The notes beneath the pieces were generated by a model. That model had not been told where the DNA came from and ran no database searches. It was given only the letters and a program-made list of their open reading frames with translations. Below are positions 7,551 through 58,047 of a DNA stretch of 64,000 nucleotides, piece by piece. The stretch lies in contig NC_043022.1 in the NCBI RefSeq assembly GCF_006345805.1, forward strand, positions 13,826,001 to 13,890,000, written 5' to 3'. The position numbers and the translations under genes are program-made. The stretch comes from Octopus sinensis. Lineage: Eukaryota. Each line of letters starts with the position of its first letter. The stretch's first letter is position 1.

Positions 7551-8670
7551 ATGTTGTTTTTTTTTGGGGCTTGCTTATCATTTATCCCCATAAAATAAAC
7601 TTTTGTGTTGTGAAGTCTGATTAATGCAAAGGGCATTCTACCAAACCCCTTTTTCCAATTCACCTGTTTAGCAAAATCTCATCAAGGTAACCTCTTACAT
7701 TACTACGGTGTTGTGAGGATGCCCCCATCCTGCTGGAAATAAAACTCTGCATTTTCAAAGTCCTCTTCTGATGAAGAGCCATGCTTGGTGTGTCATCTTC
7801 CATCTTAAACTTCCTCTGTGTGTATCAACCTAATATATTCACTACATACATCCTTTTGTTTTTACTTTTATTTTCAATTTACCTATGTATATATATATAT
7901 ATATCATCATCATCATCGTTTAACGTCCGTTTTCCACGCTAGCACGGGTTGGACGGTTCGACCGGGGTCTGGGAAGCCAGGGGCTGCACCAAGCTCCAGT
8001 CTGATCTGGCAGTGTTTCTACACCTGGATGCCCTTCCTAACGCCAACCACTCCGCGAGTGTAGTGGGTGCTTTTTACGTACCACCTGCACAGGTGCCAGA
8101 GGGGTCTGGCATCGGCCACGATCGGTTGGTGCTTTTTATGTGCCACCGGCACAGAAGCCAGTCGAGGCGGTGCTGGCATTGGCCACGTTCGGATGGTGCT
8201 TTTTATGTGCCACCGGCACAGAAGCCAGTATATATATATATATATATCATCATCATCGTTTAACGTCTGCTTTCCAAGCTAGCATGGGTTGGATGATTTG
8301 ACTGAGGTCTGCCGAACCAGATGGCTGCACCAGACTCCAATCTGATATATATATATATATTTACCTGTATTTACATACATTATTTATGTAGATGTTTGTG
8401 TGTGTTATCATCATCGTTTAACATCTGCTTTCCATGCTGGCATGGCTGGGTCGGTTTGACAGGAGCCAGCCAGGCAGAAGCCTGCACCAGACCTCTGTGT
8501 CTGTTTTGGCAGGGTTTCTACAGCTGGATGCCCTTCCTAACACCAACTACCTAGCAGAGCAACAAAGATTGGCATATTTTATGTGCACATTTTATGACAT
8601 AGAATGACATATCTAATATGCATACGCACACACACATATACTCATATCCATCCTGACATCTTCCCAACAG

Positions 8671-10089: not shown

Positions 10090-10830
10090 CGCCTTCGTTC
10101 CCTAGAGGGAAAGGACTAGATTGGGATTAGTCGTTGCCTACTAGGGGCTCTTACATACCCAGGAAACGCCGGGCTATGCTGCTAGTAATAGATAAGGCAA
10201 ATGAGGATATGAAGACTAGGAAAGCCCTTGGGCCATTGGGTATCACTGCTGAGATGATTAGAATATCTGCTGGCATGGGATACAGCCTAGTCACTCGTAT
10301 AGTTAATCAGGTTATTCAGGAAGGCATCATCCCGAAAGACTGGTGTGGTTGTGTTATAGTCAGCTGCTACAAGGGTAAAGGTGATGCCTTAGAAACAACT
10401 ACAGAGATATGAAACTGCTGAACCAAGTGATGAAAGTTAGAGAGAGAGAGTTCTAATCTCAACTGATTAGGGATAGAATTAAACTAGATGAGATGCAGTT
10501 TGGTTTTGTTCCTGGAAGAAGTACCACAGATGCTATCTTCATAGTGAGACGGTTACAAGGAAAATATTCAGCCAAAAGTAAACCATTATACTTAGCCTTC
10601 GTTGACCTGGAAACTTTTGACTGGGTCCCCTGCTCTCTTATCTGGTGGTCTCTAAGGAAGCTAGGAGTAGAGGAGTGGCTTGTTAGAGCCGTGCCAGCCA
10701 TGTACAGTGATGCTGTCAGTAAGGTCAGGGTCGGTCTTGAATACAGTGATGAATTTAGCATGCAAGTTGGGGTTCATCAGGGCTCAGTTCTTAGTCCACT
10801 CTGATCTTTCGTAGTTCTTCAGGCCATCAG
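10090..10830 (+). mobile_element. RTE-clade LINE remnant (RT domain, frameshifted)
   Basis: KALGPLGITAEM, WCGCVIVSCYKGKGDA, QFGFVPGRSTTDAIF, AFVDLE, GVHQGSVLSPL. Confidence 0.9.
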
Positions 10831-11165: not shown

Positions 11166-12309
11166 GTGAGGATTCAACCCTTTTTTTTTTTCTATTTCTC
11201 TCTCTCTTTCTCTTTTACTTGTTTCAGTCATTTGACTGTGGCCATGCTGGAGCACCGCCTTTAGTCGAGCAACTCAACCCCGGGACTTATTCTTTGTAAG
11301 CCCAGTACTTATTCTATCGGTCTCTTTTTGCCGAACCGCTAAGTGACGTAAACATACCAGCATCGGTTGTCAAGCAACGCTAGGGGGACAAACACACACA
11401 CATATATATACATATATACGACGGGCTTCTTTCAGTTTCCGTCTACCAAATCCACTCACAAGGCTTTGGTCGGCCCGAGGCTATAGCAGAAGACACTTGC
11501 TTGAGATGCCACGCAGTGGGACTGAACCCGGAACCATGTGGTTGGTTAGCAAGCTACTTACCACACAGCCACTCCTGCGCCTATGCTGTTTTGTTGTTGT
11601 TAGTTTATTTTTTTTTCTTTTCTTCCCATTACCCATTCATCATCATTACCATCCATTTTTTTAAGATGTGTTCATCTAACTCATCATCATCATCGTTTAA
11701 CGTCCGTTCTCCATGCTAGCATGGGTTGGACGGTATATCATCTATCTGATATATCCCTGTCATCAATAGATACACACACATTTATATACACAAACACACA
11801 TATATACCCCCTTTCTATTCTACACACACACACACATATAGGCGTGAGTGTTTGTCCGCTCCCCATTGCTCGACAGCCGTTGTTGGTATATTTACGTCCT
11901 CATAACTTAGCACTTTGGCAGAAGAGACTGATAGAATAAGTACCAGGCTTACAAAGAATAAGTCCAGGGGTTGATTTCTTCAATTAAAAGGCAATGCTCC
12001 AGCATGGCCTCAGTCAAATGACTGAAACAAATAAAAGAATATGTATATACACACCCACACACACAAATATGAACCCCTTTTTATTCCACATACCCACATG
12101 CATATACATACACACACATGTTGGCGTTAGGAAGGGCATCCAGCTGTAGAAACATTGCCAGATAAGACTGGAGCCTGGTGCAGCCTTCTGGCTTCCCAGA
12201 TCTCCGGTCGAACCGTCCAACCCATGCTAGCATGGAGAACGGACGTTAAACGATGATGATGATGATGACACGCATCATGTATATTTATATACACGCACAT
12301 ATATATCAT

Positions 12310-14531: not shown

Positions 14532-14736
14532 GTAAGTCTTTTGTTTCTTCTTCTTTTCATGTCAGAAAGGGGCAGCTGTGGCTGTGAGCCGAAGGCATTC
14601 GCTTCCCAACCACATGGTTTTGGGTTCAGTCCCACTGCACGGCACCTTGGGAAAGTGTCTTTTACTATGGTCCCTGGGATAACCAAAGCCTTGTGACTGC
14701 ATTTGGTGGATGGAAACTGTGTGGAAGTCCGTGTAT

Positions 14737-15565
14737 GTGTGTGTGTGTAATAATAATAATAATAATAATAAATGCAAAATTCTGTCTGTCTGTCTGGGAC
14801 CCCTGTATCTTAGTCTACATTTGCTCTACACAGACATATTATACCTATTTTGGAATCAGGATGATCCCAGGATTGAAAGATCTGCCCTTCATTTGGTCCT
14901 TGAACATCCAACATTGGGATCAGGTCTGGATGAGAATTTGTTATAAGAAAACAGTTGAAAATTCAAATTTTAAAAGAATTCCAAAAATTTGTGAACTTTC
15001 AAGATTTTTATTTAAACTGAGTGTAAAGTAATACCATTATTGGTAGGGGACCAATAAAGGCTCTCTTTAGTTTTGGGCCACAGGTCCGCGTAACCCCCTG
15101 CAGGAGCTAACCACACGGAGTGCAGCTTTTTAAGCTTGCAGATATATGTGTGTGTGTGTGTGTGTGTAATAATAATAATAATAATAATAAATGCAAAATT
15201 CTGTCTGTCTGTCTGGGACCCCTGTATCTTAGTCTACATTTGCTCTACACAGACATATTATACCTATTTTGGAATCAGGATGATCCCAGGATTGAAAGAT
15301 CTGCCCTTCATTTGGTCCTTGAACATCCAACATTGGGATCAGGTCTGGATGAGAATTTGTTATAAGAAAACAGTTGAAAATTCAAATTTTAAAAGAATTC
15401 CAAAAATTTGTGAACTTTCAAGATTTTTATTTAAACTGAGTGTAAAGTAATACCATTATTGGTAGGGGACCAATAAAGGCTCTCTTTAGTTTTGGGCCAC
15501 AGGTCCGCGTAACCCCCTGCAGGAGCTAACCACACGGAGTGCAGCTTTTTAAGCTTGCAGATATA

Positions 15566-15575
<10 letters not shown>
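14737..15575. repeat. 419-bp direct tandem duplication
   Basis: AATGCAAAAT at 14771 and 15190; the two copies appear identical and are bounded by (TG)n(AAT)n. Confidence 0.92.
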
Positions 15576-15624
<49 letters not shown>

Positions 15625-16637: not shown

Positions 16638-18045
16638 GAAAGATCTTAGTAAAAATCCCATTCTGAGTTGGTGATGTAAAAATACCAGAAAGAGAAGAGA
16701 GACACTTACCCCCTTTGTGTTTGTTTGTGGAAGGTGGCTGGTCACCCTTTATAATATCCTGCATCTAGAAAGGTCTGTTTTGTGACTTGGTCCTCATTTC
16801 GTTGTATAATCTTGACTTCCAGCTGGAGCACCGCTTTTAGTCGAGCAAATCAGCCCCAGGACTTATTCTTTGTAAGCCCAGTACTTATTCTATCGGTCTC
16901 TTTTGCCAAACCGCTGAGTTATAGGGACGTAAACACACCAGCATCGAATGTCAAGTGATGTTGGGGGGTACAAACATATTCACAGACATACATATATACA
17001 TATGACGGGCTTCTTTCAGTTTCCATCTACCAAATCCACTCACAAGGCTTTGGTCGGCCCGAGGCTATAGTAGAAGACACTTGTCCAAGGTGCCACACAA
17101 TGGGACTGAACCCGGAACATTGTGGTTGGTAAGCAAGCTACTTACCACACAGCCACTCCTATGCCTAGGAGAATAATAACAATATCTTGTCACAGCCTGG
17201 CAACCCTTCAGTATTGGTAGACAACACCATTCACCCACAAAATCTTCCCTCGTGACAAAGAAGAGAAAGAGGCTGAGCTGAAAAAAGTGGGTAAATGGTA
17301 TCATCTCCTCACACTGTCACTCTATAGACCAATATCTTTACTGCCCTTGTCATTTTTCATATTGAAATTGTGTACAAGTGTTATTTATATGCAAGTCATC
17401 ATCATCATCATCATTATTGTCTTATCATTTTTATCATCGTCGTCATCATTGTTGTTGTTATTGCTATCATCATTTTTACATCTTGTTTGTCCATTCTGTC
17501 TCGTGGCCAGTGTTGGATGACGATTCCTCTCCAACACAGCATCCTCACATTTGTTCTTCCTTTGTCATCTCTCGTGCAAGGTTTAGCTTCCTGGAAACCA
17601 TCATCATCACTCACCCCCACATCTTGATCGTCGTCTTTCATTCTGTCCTTCCCTACAGCACTTCTCCACCCATCTGTCATCATTCATATGCATCACACAG
17701 CCATTCCAACCTCGCCATTCCTTCCTGCACACCACCACCACCACCATCATCGATTCCTTTCATACTCGGATTTTCCTCTCAGCTTGTCTATGCTTTGCCT
17801 TTTGTGCACATTGACATCACACATCCAGTGGATCACGCTCACCTCATTCTTCCCCGACCATCACACATCCTCTGCATTCAGAACCCATGTCTCACTACCA
17901 TGCAGCATCACAGTTCATACCCAAAGCATCGTACAATCTACCATTCGCTTAGAGAGAAAAGCTCATTAGCAGAGATCATCATCATCATCATCATCGTTTA
18001 ACGTCCGTTTTCCGCGCTAGCACGGGTTGGATGGTAAAAATTTAT

Positions 18046-18128
18046 TAGCACGAGTAGGGTTCGAACCCACGCGGACAGATGTCCATTGGAACTTAAGTCC
18101 AACGCCTTAACCACTCGGCCATCGTGCT
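18046..18128 (-). tRNA. tRNA-Leu(UAA), intact cloverleaf
   Basis: 83 nt; acceptor AGCACGA/TCGTGCT+A, D-arm GCC/GGC, anticodon stem TTGGA/TCCAA with CT-TAA-GT loop, variable arm GGAC/GTCC, T-arm with TTCGAAC; T5 terminator at 18036-18040 on the minus strand. Confidence 0.95.
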
Positions 18129-18143
18129 GAACACAAGGGGAAT

Positions 18144-18260
18144 GCTTACAGCACTTAGGTTTCCTAAGCGGTCACCCATCTAAGTACAAACTAGGCTCGA
18201 TGTTGCTTAACTTCGGTGATCGGACGAGAACCGGTGCTTTCAGCGTGATATGGCCGTAAA
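18144..18260 (-). rRNA. 5S rRNA copy, probably degenerate
   Basis: minus strand TTTACGGCCATATCACGCTGAAAGCACCGGTTCTCGTCCGATCACCGAAGTTAAGC...GATGGGTGACCGC...GTGCTGTAAGC matches metazoan 5S; the first 1-2 nt are altered, helix II has 2 mismatches and no T-run terminator follows. Confidence 0.9.
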
Positions 18261-19640
18261 AGAAAACTTCATCGACAGAGGCAACAATTTCCTGAATTCT
18301 CTTCATCCTATTCTAATTCTGGCCACAACACTTTCAGTACACTTGCCCCACTCCCCACTTCTCGTTAGGTCCCCTAGGTAACAGAATCCATTACCAACTA
18401 CTTCTACACAGCCTATTAAATATTGCAAGGAACTTGCTTTATTGGTGTTCTAAGGGCTCACTGTTCCTGCACACCTGTCACAGGTAAAGATTCTATTCAC
18501 TGTCGTCAGCCTGTCTTTGTTTTCCCTACACCTTGTATACCCCTCGGCACTGCATCGAGCACACCAGGTGGAATTCTTGGCAACCCCCTGTCTGCGTATT
18601 GGGGGGCACAGCTGATATGGCAATTTCAAAAACATGTCTCTCTCATCTGGATATCGGTTAAAACTACCAAGATAAATGCCATGTTTTAAATGAACTTACA
18701 TTATTCATTTGATGAGCGTCAGCTATTGGAAGGGGGAAGAAAATTTCTGATAGATATGCATATAGACACACACACATATATGTATATAAGTACATAATCA
18801 TCATCATCGTTTAACGTCTGCTTTCCATGCTGGCATGGGTTGGACGATTTGACAGAGGACTGGCAAACCAGATGGCTGCACCAGGCTCCAATCTAATCTG
18901 GTAGAGTTTCTACAGCTGAATGCCCTTCCTAACGCCAACCACTCCGAGAGTGTAGTGGGTGCTTTTATGTACCACCGGCACAAGAGCCAGTCAGGCGGTA
19001 CTGGCAACGGCCACGCTCAAATGGTGTTTTTTACGTGCCACCTACACAGGAGCCAGTCCTTGGGTAGATTTTGTACCTGGCCGGCTCTTGTCAACCATCT
19101 TACCCATGCATGCATGGAAGATGGGTGTTAAAAGATGATGATGAAGTGTGAAAACCATTTCTGTGCAGTTCTTTCAGTAAAATCACTTTCTCTGTACATG
19201 GCTTTAGCAACTCTGGAACTTTGGCTGAAAGCAAAGAGAAGCAGGTGTTGAAAATGCTTCCTGGTTTTTTTTTGTTTTTGCTTTTTTTCCTACTTGGCCT
19301 TCCATGATCATACACCTGGAAAGAAGTAAAATTTATTCAAATTTTCAAAAATGCTGAACAAAATTTGTAATGGAAGAATAGAACCACTAAAATTAAAAGC
19401 ATAAAAAAAAAACACTACGAGAAAAATACTTTTTGTGTTAATTCGAATAACATTAGAAAGAACTGAAAGAATTTATCTGACAACACCATAGATTGATAGG
19501 TCTACAGGTAGATAGATAGATAGATAGATAAGAAGGCAGGTAGATAAATAAACGGGGCTATAGATATAGATAGGTCTATAGATAGATTAGTCTACAGATA
19601 GATAGGTCTATCGATAGACAGACAGGGCTGTAGATATAGA

Positions 19641-22884: not shown

Positions 22885-23882
22885 GTAAGTTACAAACTCA
22901 ACAAACATCTGTGTGTGTTTGGTACCAGAACTTGTGGGGGGGGGGGAGACTTTCAATAAATGATTAAATATATTTTCTGAATGAAAGGGTGATTTGTACG
23001 AAAATATTTTATGGGTCTCGAATTTGAGTCTCAAGTACAAAATCTAAAGTTTCCAGAGCTGTGGAGTCGAAACAAAAAACTTTGACTCCGACTCCTCTTT
23101 ATGTAATCATGCAGTTGTGATCCCTATGCTGGTGGCACGTAAAAAGCACCATCCGAACGTGGCCGATGCCAGTGCCGCCTAGACTGGCTTCTGTGCCGGT
23201 GGCACGTAAAAAGCACCATCTGAACGTGGCCGATGCCAGTGCCTCCTCAACTGGCTTCCGTGCTGGTAGCATGTAAAAAGCACCATTCGATCATGGCCGT
23301 TGCCAGCCTCGCCTGGCCCCCGTGCCAGTGGAACTTAAAACGCACCCACTACTCTCTCGGAGTGGTTGGCGTTATGAAGGGTATCCAGCTGTAGAAACTC
23401 TGCCAGATAAAACCGGAGCCTGGTGCAGCCTTCTGGCTTCCCAGATCCCCGGTCAAACTGTCCAACCCATGCCAGCATGGAAAACGGAAGTTAAATGATG
23501 ATGATTGTGGTCTACATATCTCATAAAGTATACGCTTGTATTTTGAGGAGGCCTATATATTACAACTGGTTTATATCAAAGAATATAAAGACATTGTGAG
23601 TCGGAATCAGAGTCAGTATAGTTTTACAGATTCTGACTACCCCCTTAATTGTGTCCGACTCCACAGCCCTGGCTTTTACTCTAAGCCAACATCTTTGTGA
23701 CCCCTTGCATGTCTCTTCACATTCCTCCTCCTCCTCCATCTCTTTGCTTGCCTCCCTACCTCAGCCATTATTTATCTCTCTTGTCCTTTACCTTACCCCC
23801 CCCCACATTCTCTCTCTCACAAACGCACATCATCAAACCTCCATCTTGTGTTATATTTACAAAGGTGTCCGTCACATTTAGA

Positions 23883-24925
23883 GTACCCCACATGTACCAT
23901 TAATCCCTAAACGTTTGTTACATCTACTAAGGTACCCCACTATTAACCCCTAAATGTCTCACATCTAGGGTACCCCACATGTACCATTAATCCCTAAACG
24001 TTTGTTACATGTACTAAGGTACCCCACTATTACTATTAACCCCTAAATGTCTGTCACATTTAGAGTACCCCATAAGTACCATTAATCCCTAAACGTTTGT
24101 TACATGTACTAAGGTACCCCACTATTACTATTAACCCCTAAATGTCTGTCACATTTAGAGTACCCCATAAGTACCATTAATCCCTAAACGTTTGTTACAT
24201 GTACTAAGGTACCCCACTATTACTATTAACCCCTAAATGTCTGTCACATCTGGGGTACCCCACATGTACCATTAATCCCTAAACGTTTGTTACATCTAAG
24301 GTACCCCACTATTAACCCCTAAATGTCTCACATCTAGGGTACCCTACATGTACCATTAATCCCTAAACGTTTGTTACATCTACTAAGGTACCCCACTATT
24401 AACCCCTAAATGTCTCACATCTAGGGTACCCCACATGTACCATTAATCCCTAAACGTTTGTTACATCTACTAAGGTACCCCACTATTACTATTAACCCCT
24501 AAATGTCTGTCACATCTAGGGTACCCCATAAGTACCATTAATCCCTAAACGTTTGTTACATGTACTAAGGTACCCCACTATTACTATTAACCCCTAAATG
24601 TCTGTCACATTTAGAGTACCCCATAAGTACCATTAATTCCTAAACGTTTGTTACATGTACTAAGGTACCCCACTATTACTATTAACCCCTAAATGTCTGT
24701 CACATCTAGGGTACCCCATAAGTACCATTAATCCCTAAACGTTTGTTACATGTACTAAGGTACCCCACTATTACTATTAACCCCTAAATGTCTGTCACAT
24801 TTAGAGTACCCCATAAGTACCATTAATCCCTAAACGTTTGTTACATGTACTAAGGTACCCCACTATTACTATTAACCCCTAAATGTCACATCTAGGGTAC
24901 CCCACATGCACCATTGACCTTAAAT
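23883..24925. repeat. minisatellite, 87-95 bp unit, about 11 copies
   Basis: GTACCCCA units at 23883, 23970, 24065, 24160...; each unit holds two GTACCCCA sub-repeats. Confidence 0.95.
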
Positions 24926-31296: not shown

Positions 31297-31549
31297 TATA
31301 TGTATGTATGTATGTATATATATATATATATATATATAAAAACAAACACACACACACACATGTATTGTGGGCTTGAATGAATTCTGGTGCAATCTCATCA
31401 TCACCATTTAGCATCCATTTTCCTTGCTGGCTTGGGTTGAATTGTTTGACAAGACTGACAACAGGTTCCAATATCTGTTTTGGAATGGTTTCTATGGCTG
31501 GATGCCTTTCCTAATGCCAACCACTTTACAGAGTCTACTGGGAGCTTTT

Positions 31550-32085
31550 TACGTGATAGCATCACCACCGCTTTTTACATGGCACCATCACCGGTGCTTT
31601 TTATGCGGTGCCATCACTGATGCTTTTTACATGGCTCCATCACCGGAGCTTTTTATGTGGCACCATCACTAGCACTTTTTACGTGGTACCATCACCGGAG
31701 CTTTTTACATGGTACCATCACTAGCACTTTTTACGTGGTACCATCACCGGAGCTTTTTACATGGTACCATCACTAGCACTTTTTACGTGGTACCATCACC
31801 GGAGCTTTTTACATGGTACCATCACTAGCACTTTTTACGTGGTACCATCACCGGAGCTTTTTACATGGTACCATCACTAGCACTTTTTACGTGGTACCAT
31901 CACCAGAGCTTTTTACATGGTACCATCACTAGCACTTTTTACGTGGTACCATCACCGGAGCTTTTTACATGGTACCATCACTAGCACTTTTTACGTGGTA
32001 CCATCACCGAGCTTTTTACATGGTACCATCACTAGCACTTTTTACGTGGTACCATCACCGGAGCTTTTTATGTTGCACCATCAAT
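31550..32085. repeat. 52-bp (2 x 26) minisatellite inside a SINE-B
   Basis: GTACCATCACTAGCACTTTTTACGTG / GTACCATCACCGGAGCTTTTTACATG alternate; period 52 (31681 to 31733). Confidence 0.92.
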
Positions 32086-40829: not shown

Positions 40830-41167
40830 TATAAAATATTATTTGAGACAAAACCACTATTTTGCAAAACAAACAAGGAAAGACTTAATCAATACATAAA
40901 ATTTAATAAATAGTAAAAAAAACCGCCACTACAATCGTTTCTTGTCTTGATCGACAATCTTCAGGTGGACTTCCAATAATTCAGTTACAAATTATGAAGT
41001 CATAATTTGTAACTGAATTATTGGAAGTCCACCTGAAGATTGTCGATCAAGACAAGAAACGATTGTAGTGGCGGTTTTTTTTACTATTTATTAAATTTTA
41101 TGTATTGATTAAGTCTTTCCTTGTTTGTTTTGCAAAATAGTGGTTTTGTCTCAAATAATATTTTATA
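40830..41167. mobile_element. Penelope-like terminus as a perfect 168-bp-arm palindrome
   Basis: 40830-40997 is the exact reverse complement of 41000-41167 (2-nt loop); carries the hammerhead motif; sits in the (TA)n spacer of a split SINE-A. Confidence 0.75.
41029..41071 (+). ncRNA. minimal (Penelope-type) type I hammerhead ribozyme, core intact; mirror copy on minus at 40926-40968
   Basis: CCAC-CTGAAGA-TTGTC(GATCAA)GACAA-GAAACGATTGTA^GTGG: stem I CCAC/GTGG, 5-bp stem II, near-palindromic stem III, GUA cleavage triplet. Confidence 0.75.
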
Positions 41168-41624: not shown

Positions 41625-42966
41625 GTAAGTATGGCCTCGTTTACCCGCACTCACATCTGCATCGCATATACACCTCTTCTCCACTTGGTAACTTCCACTC
41701 CTCTACCTTCACTCACATGTCACGTAATAGGTGTACGTCTTCTTCACTTGGTAACTCAGACCTCTTTTACGTTTACTAGCATACAAGCATACATACATGC
41801 ATACGTCTTCTCCACTTGGTAAGCAAAAGTGTCATTTACATAACACTCACACTCACATCTCCTGTACACCTCTTCTCCACATGCTAACTCAGACCTCATC
41901 TTCCTTCTCTCACACTCACATTTGTTCGATTAAAAGTGGTGTTCCAGTATGGCCACAGTCAAATGACTGAAATAAATAAATAAATAAAAGAATATTTTTG
42001 CATGTAGGCGTGGGTATGTGGTCAAGAATTTTGCTTTCATCTCGTGGTTTCAGTGTACTTTATATATATATATATATTACGCTCGTGGAGTGGTTGGCGT
42101 TAGGAAGGGCATCCAGCTGTAGAAACACTGCCAGATCAGACTGGAGCCTGGTGCAGCCTCCTGGCTTCCCAGACCCCAGTCGAACCATCCAACCCATGCT
42201 AGCGCGGAAAACGGACGTTAAACGATGATGATGATATACATACAAATATTCTATAATTATAAGTATAATTATAATCAGGGGTCAGCTAATTGCTTTGCCA
42301 CTCACCAAATTTAGAAATAGGAGTTAAAATGAGCTTTTCTGCCTTGCGAACCTAAAAAGGTTATTTTAACGTACCAAACTACTTGGTAAAATTCTGATCT
42401 GATATGGCTTGGTTTCCACCCCTGGATGCTCTTCCTAACACCAACCACTCCAAGAGTGTAGTGGCTGCTTTTTACACGCTACTGGCACATGTGCCAGTTA
42501 AGTGACACCAGCATAGGCCATGACTGCGATCTCATTTGGCTTGACTGGTCTTGTCAAGAATGGTATATCGGCAAAGGGGTCAGTCACTTGTTACTTTTTA
42601 CCAGCCAGTTGCACCACACTGGCATTGGTGGTGTCTATGGTTCCACTTGGCTTCACGGATCTTCTCAAGCACGATATTACACATGTGTGTATTCATCTGT
42701 TCTCTTGACATCACGTGGTGGTTGTAAATGAGTGCCACTGTTATACAAGCAGTGCTGCTCATTTTGAGTCTTCTGTGAAAAGAATCTCTGGCCACAGGGA
42801 AATACAAATCCACTTAGAAATGGGTGAGAGTTGGTGACAGGAAGAGCACCCACCCACCCATCGAAAATCTATCCCAACGACCTACCCCCAATGCCTCTCT
42901 CTCTCTCTCCCCTCTGTATCCTCCCACTTAATTGTCATTTTCCTTTTTCTATTATTCTCGCCTCAG

Positions 42967-55529: not shown

Positions 55530-58047
55530 TACTCAGTCCCCTCAATGTGAACGAGGTCAGGCGAGGTCCCTCCTGAACCTCATCAACACTCTGTACATGG
55601 AGCAAATAATACTCCAACCAACCAGGGCAGGTAACACACTGGATCTCTGCTTCACAAATAATATGGATCTCATCCATAATGTGAAAGTGACGCCGACACT
55701 ACTCTCGGATCACAACATGGTAGAGCTGACCATGTACGGGCCAAAGGAAAGCATGGACATGCAGCCTACAAGAAACTCTCAGAATCTTTCCAGCTTGAAC
55801 TTCCATAAGGCAAACTGGAAACAAATTGAGAAAGAGATCCTCAAACAAAACTGGCCTGAATGTCTATCCTTGCCAGACATCGACATGAAACTTCAACAAT
55901 TCATGTCTGTAATGCAAGCCATATGCTACAAATGTGTCCCAAGAGAAAGGCCACTGTACACAAGAGCAAAATCCCCAGAGAGAGGAAAATTCAAATGAGA
56001 CGGCATACAAAAGTTTCAAATTGCCTAAACAAACAAATTGAAAGCAGTGAAAAGTCCTGCCTGAAAATAAAACTGTTGGAAATTGAAAAATATCTGCAAC
56101 TCTCCCATGAAAAAGAAAGAGCAGACAAAGAAACCTGGGCTATAGACAACATAAAATCTAACCCCAGAGCTCTCTATAGGTATGCCAAAGAAACAGCTAC
56201 GGTGCACTGTAGGATAGGGTCACTCCTTGAAAAGGATGGCACACTCACAGGAAATCCAATGAGTGTAAGTGAAATACTAAATGAGCAATTCAAGAGTATT
56301 TTCACTCCACCCCCAGGGCATTTTCAAGTCAGCAATCCAACTGACTTCTTTACCACTGCAGATATAAAATCAGAGGCAGCGACGATTGATTACATCAATA
56401 TAAAGGAAGATGATGTAATAAAGGCTATTGATGAAATGAAAACAAACTCAGCTACTGGCCCCGATGGATTCCCAGCAATCCTTCTAAAAGTATGTAAGAG
56501 AGTCCTAGCAAGACCACTGCAGTTCATGTTTCAGAGCTTCCTTGTAACTGGCAAACTTCCAAGAAAACTGAAGGAAGGTAAAATATGCCCTATTCATAAA
56601 GGAGGTAGCAGAGCGGAGGCCAAGAACTACAGACCTATCTCTCTGACCTCACACATCAGCAAGGTCATGGAACGAATAGTCAGAAGGAAACTAATCACCT
56701 TCCTTGAAGAAAATGACTTGCTGCCTGACACCCAACATGGTTTCCGACCAGGAAGAAGCTGCTTAACTCAGCTCCTACAACACTATGACTGGGTGCTGAA
56801 ACGACTGCTCAACCACTCAAATGTGGAAGTCATATATCTCGACTTTGCAAAGGCCTTTGATAAAGTCAATCATGGAAGGATATGTCACAAACTGCGTGAT
56901 CTTGGCATAGTTGGAAAATTGGGAGAATGGCTTCATGACTTTCTGAGTGAAATAATGAGTGGTGTTCCACAAGGCACTGTTCTGGGACCACTACTGTTCA
57001 TAATGGCCCTCTCAGACATGCCCTCAGCCATGCAGAGAGCCACGATCACAAGTTATGCAGATGATACAAAAGTTTCACAGGCAATACAGAACCCTGAAGA
57101 CGCTAAGCACCTGCAATGTGAGCTGGACAAAATATACAAGTGGGCTGAAAAGAATAGCATGCAGTTCAATGCTGAAAAGTTTCAAGCTTTATACTATCAG
57201 CATGCAAAACTAAATGCAATACCCAATAAATACACTGGACCTGGAGGGATTGCAATCCCAGAGGCACAATCAGTGCGAGACCTGGGTATTTACACAAGTA
57301 ATGATGCAACCTTTCATGTGCATGTTGCTAAATTGGCAATGAAATGTAGGCGGCTGACCGGATGGATTCTTAGAACCTTTAGAACAAGAGACCAGGAAAC
57401 CATGATGGTCCTCTGGAGGACACTTGTCCTAAGCCACTTTGACTATTGCTCTCAGCTATGGTCACCATCCAGTGTCAAGTTAATCACAGAACTTGAGGCG
57501 ATCCAACGAAGCTACATGAAGAAGATAGCCTCTGTGCAGCATATAAGCTATTGGGAAAGACTCAAGAGATTGAGACTCTATTCCTTAGAGCGTAGGCGAG
57601 AACGATATGCCATAATATACATCTGGAAGATCCTAGAAGGACTTGTCCCAAATTTTGGCATCGAGAGTTACACAAATGCCAGAACTGGGCGCCACTGCAT
57701 AGTGCCAAGGACTCCAAATTTGCCATCAAGATGTAGGACAAGATACTGTGATAGCCTGGGCTTCCGAGGCCCACAGCTCTTCAATATCCTCCAGAAGAAC
57801 CTAAGAGACCTGCATGGGGTGGATGCAGATGTCTTTAAAATGAAACTGGATCTCTTCTTGTCAGGTGTCCCAGATGAACCAACTTCACAGCAGGAGGTGC
57901 AGATGAGGGCAGCTGCATTGAACTCTCTCATGCACCAGATGGCATTTGCTAAAAAGCATTCGTGAAGTAAAATCATGTAGCAACACCAAATGGCGGTGCC
58001 CCAAGCATGGCCACAGCTTGTGAGCTGAAACTAAATAAAATAAAAAA
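55530..58047 (+). mobile_element. CR1-group LINE, 5'-truncated, with endonuclease C-terminus, RT and 3' tail
   Basis: PTRAGNTLDL...SDH (APE end), frameshift near 55990, then a 701-aa ORF with GPDG, NYRPISLTS, QHGF, YLDFAKAFD, SGVPQG, YADD and the CR1-type YWERL..LYSLERRR; A-rich end. Confidence 0.93.

What the first reader, a model, noticed from the sequence alone, without database searches (positions are those of the whole stretch)
17975..18260. Antisense 5S rRNA + tRNA-Leu(UAA) + RTE-tail cassette: a chimeric Pol III retroposon or dicistronic unit inside an XRN1 intron
Seen, minus strand, in order: a near-full 5S rRNA (18260-18144), a 15-nt spacer with no T-run terminator, a fully paired tRNA-Leu(UAA) (18128-18046), T5, the last 39 nt of the SINE-B/RTE-type tail, then (GAT)7. 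The block splits an RTE remnant whose reading frame resumes on the other side. It is flanked by a 20-bp imperfect direct repeat (AGAAAAGCTCATTAGCAGAG at 17955-17974, AGAAAACTTCATCGACAGAG at 18261-18280; 15/20), and the 5S 5' end abuts that repeat. Established: 5S-derived and composite SINE heads exist, dicistronic tRNA-5S Pol III units are known in some fungi, and RTE machinery mobilises RNAs carrying its tail. Inference: either a 5S-tRNA read-through transcript was retrotransposed with an RTE tail (a new SINE or a template-switch chimera), or the genome has a linked 5S/tRNA-Leu repeat. The intact tRNA beside a decayed 5S and TSD suggests the tRNA may be under selection.
Basis: partly seen in the sequence, partly recalled or inferred. 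Interest (0 to 1): 0.82.

Follow-up and report, generated by a model that had tools for sequence, protein, structure and literature searches.

The report
5S–tRNA–SINE-tail chimeric retrocopy
A single 286-bp retro-insertion fuses copies of a 5S rRNA, a whole precursor tRNA-Leu and the last 40 bases of a local SINE; it is most likely a one-off product of a LINE reverse transcriptase jumping between RNA templates, a known kind of event and not a new gene arrangement.

Summary
On the minus strand lie a full-length 5S rRNA copy (Rfam 94 bits), a 15-nt gap, a complete tRNA-Leu(UAA), ATAAA+T5, the last 40 nt of the window's abundant (GAT)n-tailed SINE, and (GAT)7. Imperfect 20-bp direct repeats (15/20) flank the block. 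It sits inside an old LINE remnant, antisense in an XRN1 intron. Removing the block plus one repeat restores the LINE reading frame, so the 286 bp entered in one target-primed event.

Each inner module ends as a primary Pol III transcript would: 5S at its 3' end plus TT, and the tRNA with a short trailer ending in a T-run, as in eight native tRNA-Leu genes fetched for comparison. All parts share one orientation.

The best reading is a tripartite template-switch chimera (SINE/LINE tail, then pre-tRNA-Leu, then 5S rRNA), like the U6/L1 and Magnaporthe tripartite chimeras. The T5 between tRNA and tail argues against a working SINE master. The 5S-first order and the TE context argue against a native dicistronic unit. 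Selection on the tRNA is not shown.

The source genome and its relatives were not searchable here, so copy number and the orthologous empty site remain untested. This is a new member of a known kind, of modest interest.

The parts
18261..18280 (-). Upstream copy of the 20-bp target-site duplication (CTCTGTCGATGAAGTTTTCT). It encodes P-L-S-M-K-F-S of the host LINE.
   Evidence: Matches the downstream copy 15/20. With one copy removed the LINE frame is colinear with the family consensus.
18141..18260 (-). 5S rRNA retro-copy: one extra T (18260), 5S positions 3-118 (18259..18144), then ATT (18143..18141), which corresponds to the short U-rich natural 3' end. It has no T-run of 4 or more after it.
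   Evidence: RF00001 at 94 bits, full length. Aligned to native-type 5S genes that end ...AGCTTTT(T). Three internal C.A mismatches and a non-native 5' terminus.
18129..18140 (-). Spacer CCCCTTGTGTTC, or 15 nt if the ATT is included. Inferred to be the 5' leader of the pre-tRNA.
   Evidence: Length and position only. Its similarity to the 5' flanks of native tRNA-Leu genes is not significant (PWM p=0.11).
18046..18128 (-). Complete tRNA-Leu(UAA) copy with intact A box (TGGCCGAGTGG) and B box (GGTTCGAACCC). It has one G.U wobble in the T stem.
   Evidence: ARAGORN, RF00005 at 59.7 bits, boxes. It is 79/83 identical to five of the native genes in L006-L009, with an identical acceptor stem.
18036..18045 (-). 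tRNA 3' trailer ATAAA plus T5. This is a Pol III terminator and the U-run end of a primary transcript. It is the only T-run of 4 or more lying wholly inside the insert.
   Evidence: The native tRNA-Leu(UAA) genes have the same layout of 2-5 nt then T4-T7.
17996..18035 (-). Last 40 nt of the abundant SINE family's 3' tail. The host LINE's own 3' end carries a related tail. It contains a two-tier hairpin.
   Evidence: Hairpin pairs are kept in 10-14 of 14 copies.
17975..17995 (-). (GAT)7 terminal microsatellite of the SINE/LINE tail.
   Evidence: TRF. All 14 SINE copies end in (GAT)n-like repeats.
17955..17974 (-). Downstream copy of the target-site duplication (CTCTGCTAATGAGCTTTTCT). It encodes P-L-L-M-S-F-S.
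17400..18600 (-). Host: a degenerate RTE-like LINE remnant (RT C-terminal region with stop codons) that the cassette interrupts. Its own 3' end at about 17500-17400 carries a related tail ending in GATGAT repeats.
   Evidence: Translations, distant homologues carrying RVT_1 and PHD domains, 3' end sequence. The clade was not formally assigned.
11695..11734 (-). Comparator: a second 'tail-only' insertion of the same 40-nt module plus (GAT)4. It starts at the identical base, ACC(G)TCC.

Best explanation
The 286-bp block is a tripartite chimeric retro-pseudogene made in one target-primed reverse-transcription event by the LINE that mobilises the window's (GAT)n-tailed SINE.

Shown: one integration with a 20-bp target-site duplication inside an old LINE copy; all three modules in the same orientation; a 3' module that is exactly the 40-nt tail plus (GAT)7.

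Inferred: the reverse transcriptase primed on a SINE or LINE RNA at its (GAT)n tail and copied the 40-nt recognition module, a two-tier hairpin plus linker. It then jumped to the U-run 3' end of a primary pre-tRNA-Leu(UAA) transcript and copied it through its 5' leader. It jumped again to the 3' end of a 5S rRNA and copied that to within 1-2 nt of its 5' end before the cDNA was joined to the target.

The product is a bystander pseudogene in an XRN1 intron. Because tRNA promoters are internal and the copied U-run recreates a T5 terminator, the tRNA part could still be transcribable. The same T5 prevents the block from acting as an efficient Pol III-driven SINE master.
For: (1) Single event. Removing the block and one 20-mer restores a LINE frame colinear with the family consensus ...FRKLLPILTSKHxSxKxRGKV..MLHGSETW. 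A 15/20 flank match is far beyond chance. The inner modules have no tails or repeats of their own.

(2) Module ends match Pol III primary transcripts. The 5S stops at ...GTAAGC+ATT, where native genes have ...AGC+TTTT(T). The tRNA carries ATAAA+T5, the same architecture as the eight tRNA-Leu(UAA) genes on contigs L006-L009 and the two on L004/L005.

(3) The source tRNA was a genuine gene type. Its acceptor stem is identical to the L006-L009 genes, and pair 3-70 is compensated relative to L004/L005.

(4) The tail is a discrete module. It is 1-2 mismatches from sister copies. A second tail-only insertion starts at the same nucleotide, just 2 nt outside a hairpin kept across copies. Recurrent switch sites near hairpins are described for such chimeras (PMC2104539).

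(5) The sense orientation of all parts fits template switching rather than twin priming (bioRxiv 10.1101/2025.02.02.635956).

(6) It is young and coherent. CpG observed/expected is 1.17, 1.16 and 1.71 in the 5S, tRNA and tail, against 0.29-0.59 in the flanking LINE and 0.48 in the window.

(7) Precedent exists. TSD-flanked tripartite chimeras occur in Magnaporthe and mouse (PMC2104539), and 5S/L1 and tRNA/L1 chimeras occur in primates (bioRxiv 10.1101/2025.02.02.635956).
Against: The TSD is only 75% identical, while the tail differs from sister copies at 1-2 of 40 positions. A per-lineage divergence near 0.05 reconciles the two only at about the 5% level.

The spacer's identity as a pre-tRNA leader is unproven, since its resemblance to native 5' flanks is not significant (p=0.11).

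The 5S carries three C.A mismatches, which is more damage than the tRNA shows. The species' own 5S and tRNA-Leu genes were not available, so the number of post-insertion changes is unknown.

Two jumps are rarer than one: PMC2104539 reports 1 tripartite against 33 bipartite chimeras.

Copy number in the genome and the orthologous empty site could not be examined.
Confidence: 0.65

Rival explanations
1. A single template switch, or tail capture, onto a pre-existing dicistronic read-through RNA. Somewhere in the genome a 5S gene without a terminator lies 15 nt upstream of a tRNA-Leu(UAA) gene. Pol III reads through to the tRNA's T-run, and that one RNA was fused to the SINE tail and retroposed.
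For: No T-run of 4 or more separates the 5S and the tRNA, only TT. Only one jump is needed. Dicistronic Pol III genes exist (PMC2566860).
Against: In all described dicistronic Pol III genes the tRNA leads, and the 5S follows at 4-7 nt (PMC2566860). Here the 5S leads. The native-type 5S genes examined end in T4-T5 directly after ...AGC. A generic scan of 241 million metagenome records for a 5S end, 8-38 nt, then the tRNA-Leu D-arm found nothing. None of the native tRNA-Leu contigs has a 5S nearby. The 5S ends with a short T-rich stub at exactly its natural 3' end.
Confidence: 0.15
2. The block is one copy of an amplifying composite SINE family with a 5S + tRNA head and an RTE-type tail.
For: It has the head-plus-LINE-tail anatomy of a SINE. 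SINEs with a 5S head or a tRNA head on RTE tails are known (PMC5786205). The 5S internal region and the tRNA A and B boxes are present.
Against: The T5 terminator between the head and the tail would end Pol III transcripts before the tail that the reverse transcriptase needs. There is a single copy in 64 kb, against 14 copies of the resident SINE. Junction-spanning probes found only single-module hits. SINE heads are normally trimmed derivatives. They are not complete precursors with a leader, a trailer and a terminator.
Confidence: 0.08
3. Whatever made it, the tRNA-Leu(UAA) copy has become a working, selected tRNA gene. This is compatible with the best explanation as to origin.
For: The cloverleaf is intact. 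The A and B boxes, a short trailer and T5 are all present. All four differences from the nearest native genes spare base pairing: three lie in the variable loop and one is a G.U wobble. CpGs are retained.
Against: The non-functional tail retains CpGs even better, at o/e 1.71, so youth explains the intactness. The T-stem C-to-T change is absent from all of the roughly 60 other tRNA-Leu sequences seen. There are no expression or conservation data.
Confidence: 0.1
4. Independent nested insertions, or resident native 5S and tRNA genes that happen to adjoin a SINE tail.
For: None specific.
Against: One TSD brackets all three parts. The inner modules have no tails or duplications of their own. The flanks are one continuous LINE frame.
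Confidence: 0.02

Closest known systems
LINE-mediated template-switch chimeric retrogenes: U6/L1 and 5S/L1 bipartite chimeras, and tripartite chimeras such as WEIRD-MgSINE-MGL in Magnaporthe and B2-U6-L1 in mouse (PMC2104539; bioRxiv 10.1101/2025.02.02.635956)
   Same: The 3' part is the 3' end of a LINE or SINE. The 5' parts are copies of abundant small cellular RNAs fused head-to-tail in the same orientation. The whole is flanked by one 14-20-bp TSD. Switch sites recur and lie near hairpins.
   Different: The retrotransposition machinery here recognises a specific tail (hairpin plus (GAT)n, of the stringent type), unlike the poly(A)-dependent L1. The retained LINE/SINE part is only the 40-nt recognition module. 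Both acceptor RNAs are Pol III primary transcripts, one of them a full pre-tRNA with its trailer and U-run. In primate L1 chimeras the 5S and tRNA parts are usually truncated and antisense (bioRxiv 10.1101/2025.02.02.635956), whereas here they are complete and sense.
SINE3, SINE2 and composite SINEs with RTE-derived tails, such as CoeSINE5 and HaSE3 (5S head) or CoeSINE4 and HaSE1 (tRNA head) (PMC5786205)
   Same: A small-RNA head with an internal Pol III promoter is joined to an RTE-type 3' tail. This is the presumed birth structure of a SINE.
   Different: The block contains two complete heads in tandem and an internal T5 terminator ahead of the tail. There is no evidence of amplification.
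Dicistronic tRNA-5S rRNA Pol III genes of Yarrowia lipolytica (PMC2566860)
   Same: A 5S and a tRNA lie on one strand, separated by a short spacer without a terminator.
   Different: The order is reversed, with the 5S first. The spacer is 15 nt against 4-7 nt. The pair sits inside a TSD-flanked retro-insertion and is not a native multi-copy gene arrangement.

Membership tests
Template-switch chimeric retropseudogene | The 3' module is the 3' terminus of a LINE or its SINE, including the terminal repeat. | tested here: met
   A 40-nt tail plus (GAT)7. It has 1-2 mismatches to sister SINE copies, and the host LINE has a related tail.
Template-switch chimeric retropseudogene | The upstream modules are copies of cellular RNAs, fused directly, in the same orientation, and complete at their 3' ends. 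| tested here: met
   The 5S runs to its natural 3' end plus TT. The tRNA runs with its trailer to a U-run. All are on the minus strand.
Template-switch chimeric retropseudogene | One target-site duplication flanks the whole chimera, with none around the inner modules. | tested here: met
   A 20-bp TSD matching 15/20. The LINE frame is restored when the insert and one copy are removed. The imperfection is unexplained.
Template-switch chimeric retropseudogene | All modules are absent together at the orthologous or ancestral empty site. | not testable with these tools
   The organism and its relatives are absent from the searchable collections.
SINE family (composite 5S+tRNA head, RTE tail) | Multiple dispersed copies share the same junctions. 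| tested here: inconclusive
   One copy in 64 kb. There are no junction-spanning hits in the protein-indexed assemblies or the metagenome scans. The source genome itself could not be searched.
SINE family (composite 5S+tRNA head, RTE tail) | A Pol III transcript from the head can extend through the LINE-derived tail. | tested here: not met
   A T5 terminator lies at 18040-18036, between the tRNA and the tail.
Dicistronic Pol III gene (tRNA-5S type) | A leading tRNA gene drives a downstream cistron. | tested here: not met
   The 5S is upstream of the tRNA. All known cases have the tRNA first (PMC2566860).
Dicistronic Pol III gene (tRNA-5S type) | A native, repeated genomic arrangement, not a retro-insertion. 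| tested here: not met
   The pair is bracketed by a TSD and a SINE tail inside a LINE remnant. It is the only 5S and the only tRNA in the window.
Functional 5S rRNA gene | Intact helices, the native 5' end and an immediate T-run terminator. | tested here: not met
   Three C.A mismatches. The first two bases are TT where GC is needed. Only TT follows the gene. It scores 94 bits against 112-122 for native-type genes.
Functional tRNA-Leu(UAA) gene | A cloverleaf, A and B boxes and a downstream terminator. | tested here: met
   There is one G.U wobble in the T stem.
Functional tRNA-Leu(UAA) gene | Expression, processing and evolutionary retention. | not testable with these tools
   No RNA data or orthologous loci were available.

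The most novel reading that the evidence does not exclude
The locus is a SINE or gene birth caught early. A stringent-type LINE reverse transcriptase fused two complete Pol III primary transcripts to its minimal 40-nt recognition tail. In doing so it created a new tRNA-Leu(UAA) gene that was ready to be transcribed from the start (internal promoter plus regenerated T5 terminator). That gene is expressed and retained, or, if the T5 were lost, could seed a composite 5S+tRNA SINE.
Probability: 0.1. Interest if true: 0.6.

Novelty: new member of a known kind. Interest (0 to 1): 0.33.

Why it matters
If the reading is right, template jumping during target-primed reverse transcription also operates for a tail-specific (hairpin plus microsatellite) LINE/SINE system in an invertebrate. 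Until now it has been documented mainly for L1 in mammals and MGL in a fungus.

It also suggests that nascent, U-tailed Pol III transcripts are preferred acceptors. The block has the proposed starting structure of a SINE, a small-RNA head on a LINE tail. It also shows why most such products go nowhere: the copied terminator cuts the head off from the tail.

For annotation, the 5S and tRNA calls in this XRN1 intron should be treated as a retro-pseudogene block. They should not be taken as evidence of a linked 5S/tRNA gene array.

Tried and rejected
(1) Junction-spanning reading frames were used as probes into the 5.8-billion-protein collection. They gave only single-module hits to native 5S or tRNA-Leu genes, and no recurring junction.

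(2) A combined probe, made of the 207-aa ORF abutting the cassette plus the XRN1 exon, gave no hit at all. The organism and its relatives are therefore not in that collection, and the orthologous-site test was impossible.

(3) A metagenome scan for a generic 5S end, 8-38 nt, then the tRNA-Leu D-arm gave 0 hits.

(4) The spacer was tested as a conserved pre-tRNA leader. The native genes in L006-L009 share a motif (...ATG[C/A]) just upstream of +1, but the cassette's spacer scores no better than 11% of random 12-mers. The claim was dropped.

(5) Folding energy of the tail: the z-scores are weak (-0.8 to -1.8). The hairpin is supported only by pair retention across copies.

(6) Which TSD copy is ancestral: the protein-level comparison with distant LINE relatives is ambiguous.

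(7) An APOBEC-like GG-to-AG editing pattern in the 5S was considered. It was not pursued, because the partner-strand C-to-T changes keep the pairing and the species' native 5S is unknown.

(8) Literal sequence strings of the SINE tail were searched in the paper library, with 0 papers found. My impression that the SINE is cephalopod (octopus)-like rests on memory only and is unverified.

(9) The SINE head was compared with Rfam, and nothing was found at E<=1.

(10) The host LINE's clade: Pfam gives only RVT_1, plus PHD in relatives. 'RTE-like' rests on motif resemblance recalled from memory.
Full report
**What is there.**
Reading the minus strand from 18300 to 17940, the order is as follows.

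| Element | Sequence | Coordinates |
|---|---|---|
| Host LINE sequence | | upstream of 18280 |
| Upstream 20-mer | CTCTGTCGATGAAGTTTTCT | 18280..18261 |
| Extra base | T | 18260 |
| 5S rRNA positions 3-118 | | 18259..18144 |
| 5S 3' stub | ATT | 18143..18141 |
| Spacer | CCCCTTGTGTTC | 18140..18129 |
| tRNA-Leu(UAA) | | 18128..18046 |
| Trailer and terminator | ATAAATTTTT | 18045..18036 |
| SINE tail, 40 nt | | 18035..17996 |
| Terminal repeat | (GAT)7 | 17995..17975 |
| Downstream 20-mer | CTCTGCTAATGAGCTTTTCT | 17974..17955 |
| Host LINE sequence | | downstream of 17955 |

- Rfam calls the 5S at 94 bits (gathering score 38) over the full model, and the tRNA at 59.7 bits.
- ARAGORN calls tRNA-Leu, anticodon TAA.
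- These are the only 5S and the only tRNA in the 64 kb.

The tail is 40 nt, not 39. The tRNA has one G.U wobble. The 5S is only mildly damaged.

**The tail.**
- The 40 nt recur at 42184-42223 (1 mismatch) and 7918-7957 (2 mismatches), with none expected by chance.
- Fourteen related tails in the window belong to one abundant SINE family. Its consensus ends ...CTGGCTTCCCAGACCCCAGTCGAACCGTCCAACCCATGCTAGCATGGAAAACGGACGTTAAAC(GAT)n.
- The host LINE remnant has a related tail of its own, ending in GATGAT repeats. This fits a SINE that borrows a LINE's 3' recognition module.
- In the SINE consensus the tail folds into a two-tier hairpin, CGUCC...GGACG around CCAUG...CAUGG. The folding energy alone is unremarkable, but the ten pairs are kept in 10-14 of 14 copies.
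- The cassette's tail begins 2 nt outside this hairpin.
- A second 'tail-only' insertion at 11695-11734 begins at exactly the same base. That points to a preferred stop or switch point. Two cases are only an anecdote.

**One insertion event.**
- The flanks translate as the C-terminal region of a LINE reverse transcriptase.
- Distant relatives (30-40% identity, some with RVT_1 and PHD domains) give the consensus ...AWGKFRKLLPILTSKHxSxKxRGKV(F/Y)xACVRSxMLHGSETW..., with that segment present once.
- In one register, the upstream 20-mer encodes PLSMKFS and the downstream one PLLMSFS.
- Joining the flanks with either single copy gives an uninterrupted, colinear LINE frame.
- The 15/20 match has a probability of about 7e-6 by base composition. 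Only 2 of 39,385 non-simple 20-mer pairs at this spacing in the window reach it.

The 20-mers are therefore a true target-site duplication around the whole 286-bp block. The inner modules have no duplications or tails of their own.

**The module ends.**
- Native-type 5S genes fetched for comparison end ...GTAAGC/GTTAGC followed directly by T4-T5 (L003, L002).
- The cassette's 5S ends ...GTAAGC+ATT and then leaves 5S sequence. That is the natural 3' end with a short T-rich stub, with no terminator.
- At the 5' end, helix I requires GCTTACGGC, but the copy has (T)TTTACGGC. So 1-2 nt are missing or replaced, as is common in retrocopies.

For the tRNA, a metagenome scan with its 3' half returned four marine-metagenome contigs. 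They carry eight tRNA-Leu(UAA) genes with the same acceptor stem. Two more native genes came from large ENA contigs.
- All have a 2-5-nt trailer followed by T4-T7, except L005, whose T5 follows a longer ATTTTGTA trailer. The cassette's ATAAA+T5 has the same form.
- The cassette tRNA is 79/83 identical to five of these genes. Three differences lie together in the variable loop, and one is a C-to-T change that makes a G.U pair in the T stem.
- Relative to L004 and L005, acceptor pair 3-70 is changed on both sides. The source was therefore a genuine gene type.
- The A and B boxes are at consensus.

**Mechanism.**
The structure has the 3' end of a LINE/SINE, then complete small RNAs fused in the same orientation, within one TSD. 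This is the defining anatomy of LINE-mediated template-switch chimeras.
- Gogvadze et al. describe tripartite cases flanked by 14-16-bp repeats in Magnaporthe and mouse. They report recurrent switch sites next to predicted hairpins and no need for microhomology (PMC2104539).
- A 2025 survey lists 5S/L1 and tRNA/L1 chimeras. It notes that same-orientation chimeras indicate template switching or RNA joining, whereas antisense ones indicate twin priming (bioRxiv 10.1101/2025.02.02.635956).

I therefore infer the following sequence:
1. The reverse transcriptase primed on the (GAT)n tail and copied the 40-nt module.
2. It jumped to the U-run end of a pre-tRNA-Leu and copied it through a 12-15-nt leader.
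3. It jumped to the 3' end of a 5S rRNA and nearly completed it.
4. The cDNA was then joined to the target.

Reading the spacer as the pre-tRNA leader rests on its length and position only. Its resemblance to native 5' flanks is not significant (p=0.11).

**Why not a SINE, a dicistronic unit or a selected tRNA.**
- **SINE:** the only T-run of 4 or more lying wholly inside the insert is the T5 between the tRNA and the tail. A Pol III transcript starting in either head would end before the tail that the reverse transcriptase needs, so this structure is a poor SINE master. There is one copy in the window against 14 of the resident SINE. Frames spanning the junctions hit only single-module native genes in a 5.8-billion-protein collection.
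- **Dicistronic unit:** known dicistronic Pol III genes all have a leading tRNA, with the 5S following at 4-7 nt (PMC2566860). Here the 5S leads, and the pair sits inside a retro-insertion. A generic scan for a close 5S-to-tRNA-Leu linkage found nothing, and the native tRNA-Leu contigs carry no 5S. A single switch onto a read-through RNA from an unseen linked locus cannot be excluded, and I give it about 0.15.
- **Selected tRNA:** CpG observed/expected is 1.17 in the 5S, 1.16 in the tRNA and 1.71 in the tail. It is 0.29-0.59 in the flanking LINE and 0.48 window-wide. The whole insert looks young, including its non-functional tail, so an intact tRNA needs no selection.

**An unexplained detail.**
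The TSD copies differ at 5 of 20 positions, yet the tail differs from two sister copies only at 1-2 CpG-type sites. A per-lineage divergence near 0.05 is compatible with the TSD, the tail and the tRNA only at roughly the 5-20% level each. Higher values fit the TSD but not the tail or the tRNA. I could not tell which copy changed.

**Limits.**
- The source organism was not identified. XRN1 and flanking-ORF probes found nothing, so the organism and its relatives are missing from the searchable collections.
- My impression that the SINE is cephalopod-like is from memory and unverified. A literal string search of the paper library found nothing.
- Genome-wide copy number, the native source genes and the orthologous empty site are therefore untested. 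These are the decisive next steps.

**Context.**
The host gene is XRN1 on the + strand: the exon at 6884-7144 hits PF18334 at E=1.4e-11. The cassette lies antisense in an intron.

**Verdict.**
This is a real and neatly preserved tripartite chimeric retro-pseudogene. It is a new member of a known kind, of modest interest. It would be of more interest if the tRNA copy proved to be expressed.

Noticed in passing
window 40830-41167: A perfect (100%) inverted repeat with 168-nt arms and a 2-nt spacer, made of unique, non-simple sequence. It is either a genuine foldback or a long-read assembly artefact.
   Followed up: partly
window 55860-57962 (+): An intact 701-aa ORF with an RVT_1 reverse-transcriptase domain (E=3e-30). 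It could be a still-active LINE copy of a different family from the cassette's host.
   Followed up: partly
window 11695-11734 (-): A second insertion consisting only of the 40-nt SINE/LINE tail plus (GAT)4. It starts at the same nucleotide as the cassette's tail, and a possible 9-10-bp duplication (AGaTAGATGA / AGtTAGATGA) lies nearby.
   Followed up: partly
window 14731-15584: A 419-bp unit duplicated in tandem at 99% identity, flanked by (TG)n, (TA)n and (TAA)n microsatellites.
   Followed up: no
window 23866-24915 and 31541-32083: A 95-bp satellite of about 11 copies, and a 26/52-bp tandem array of about 20 units.
   Followed up: no
window 7982-8232, 23127-23306, 8066-8229: The 5' regions of the abundant SINE contain variable numbers of a roughly 67-bp tandem unit (GTGCCGGTGGCACGTAAAAAGCACC...). 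The head gave no Rfam match at E<=1.
   Followed up: partly
window 10131-10801 (+): A fragment of an RTE-like reverse transcriptase (RVT_1 at 26 bits, just under Pfam's cutoff). It is on the opposite strand and separate from the cassette's host LINE.
   Followed up: no
L002 223-381, 981-1144, 1757-1875: A metagenome contig from an unknown eukaryote carries two U1 snRNA genes and a 5S rRNA gene within 1.7 kb. This is a natural 5S-snRNA linkage.
   Followed up: no
L009 502-1711; L006 1247-2326: Marine-metagenome contigs carry clusters of two or three tRNA-Leu(UAA) genes within 1-2 kb. One of them (L009 1220-1302) is degraded (46 bits).
   Followed up: no
L001 3306-3421: A decayed 5S pseudogene (58 bits, with a 5-nt insertion and a deletion) on a 2.09-Mb ENA contig from an unknown eukaryote.
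   Followed up: no
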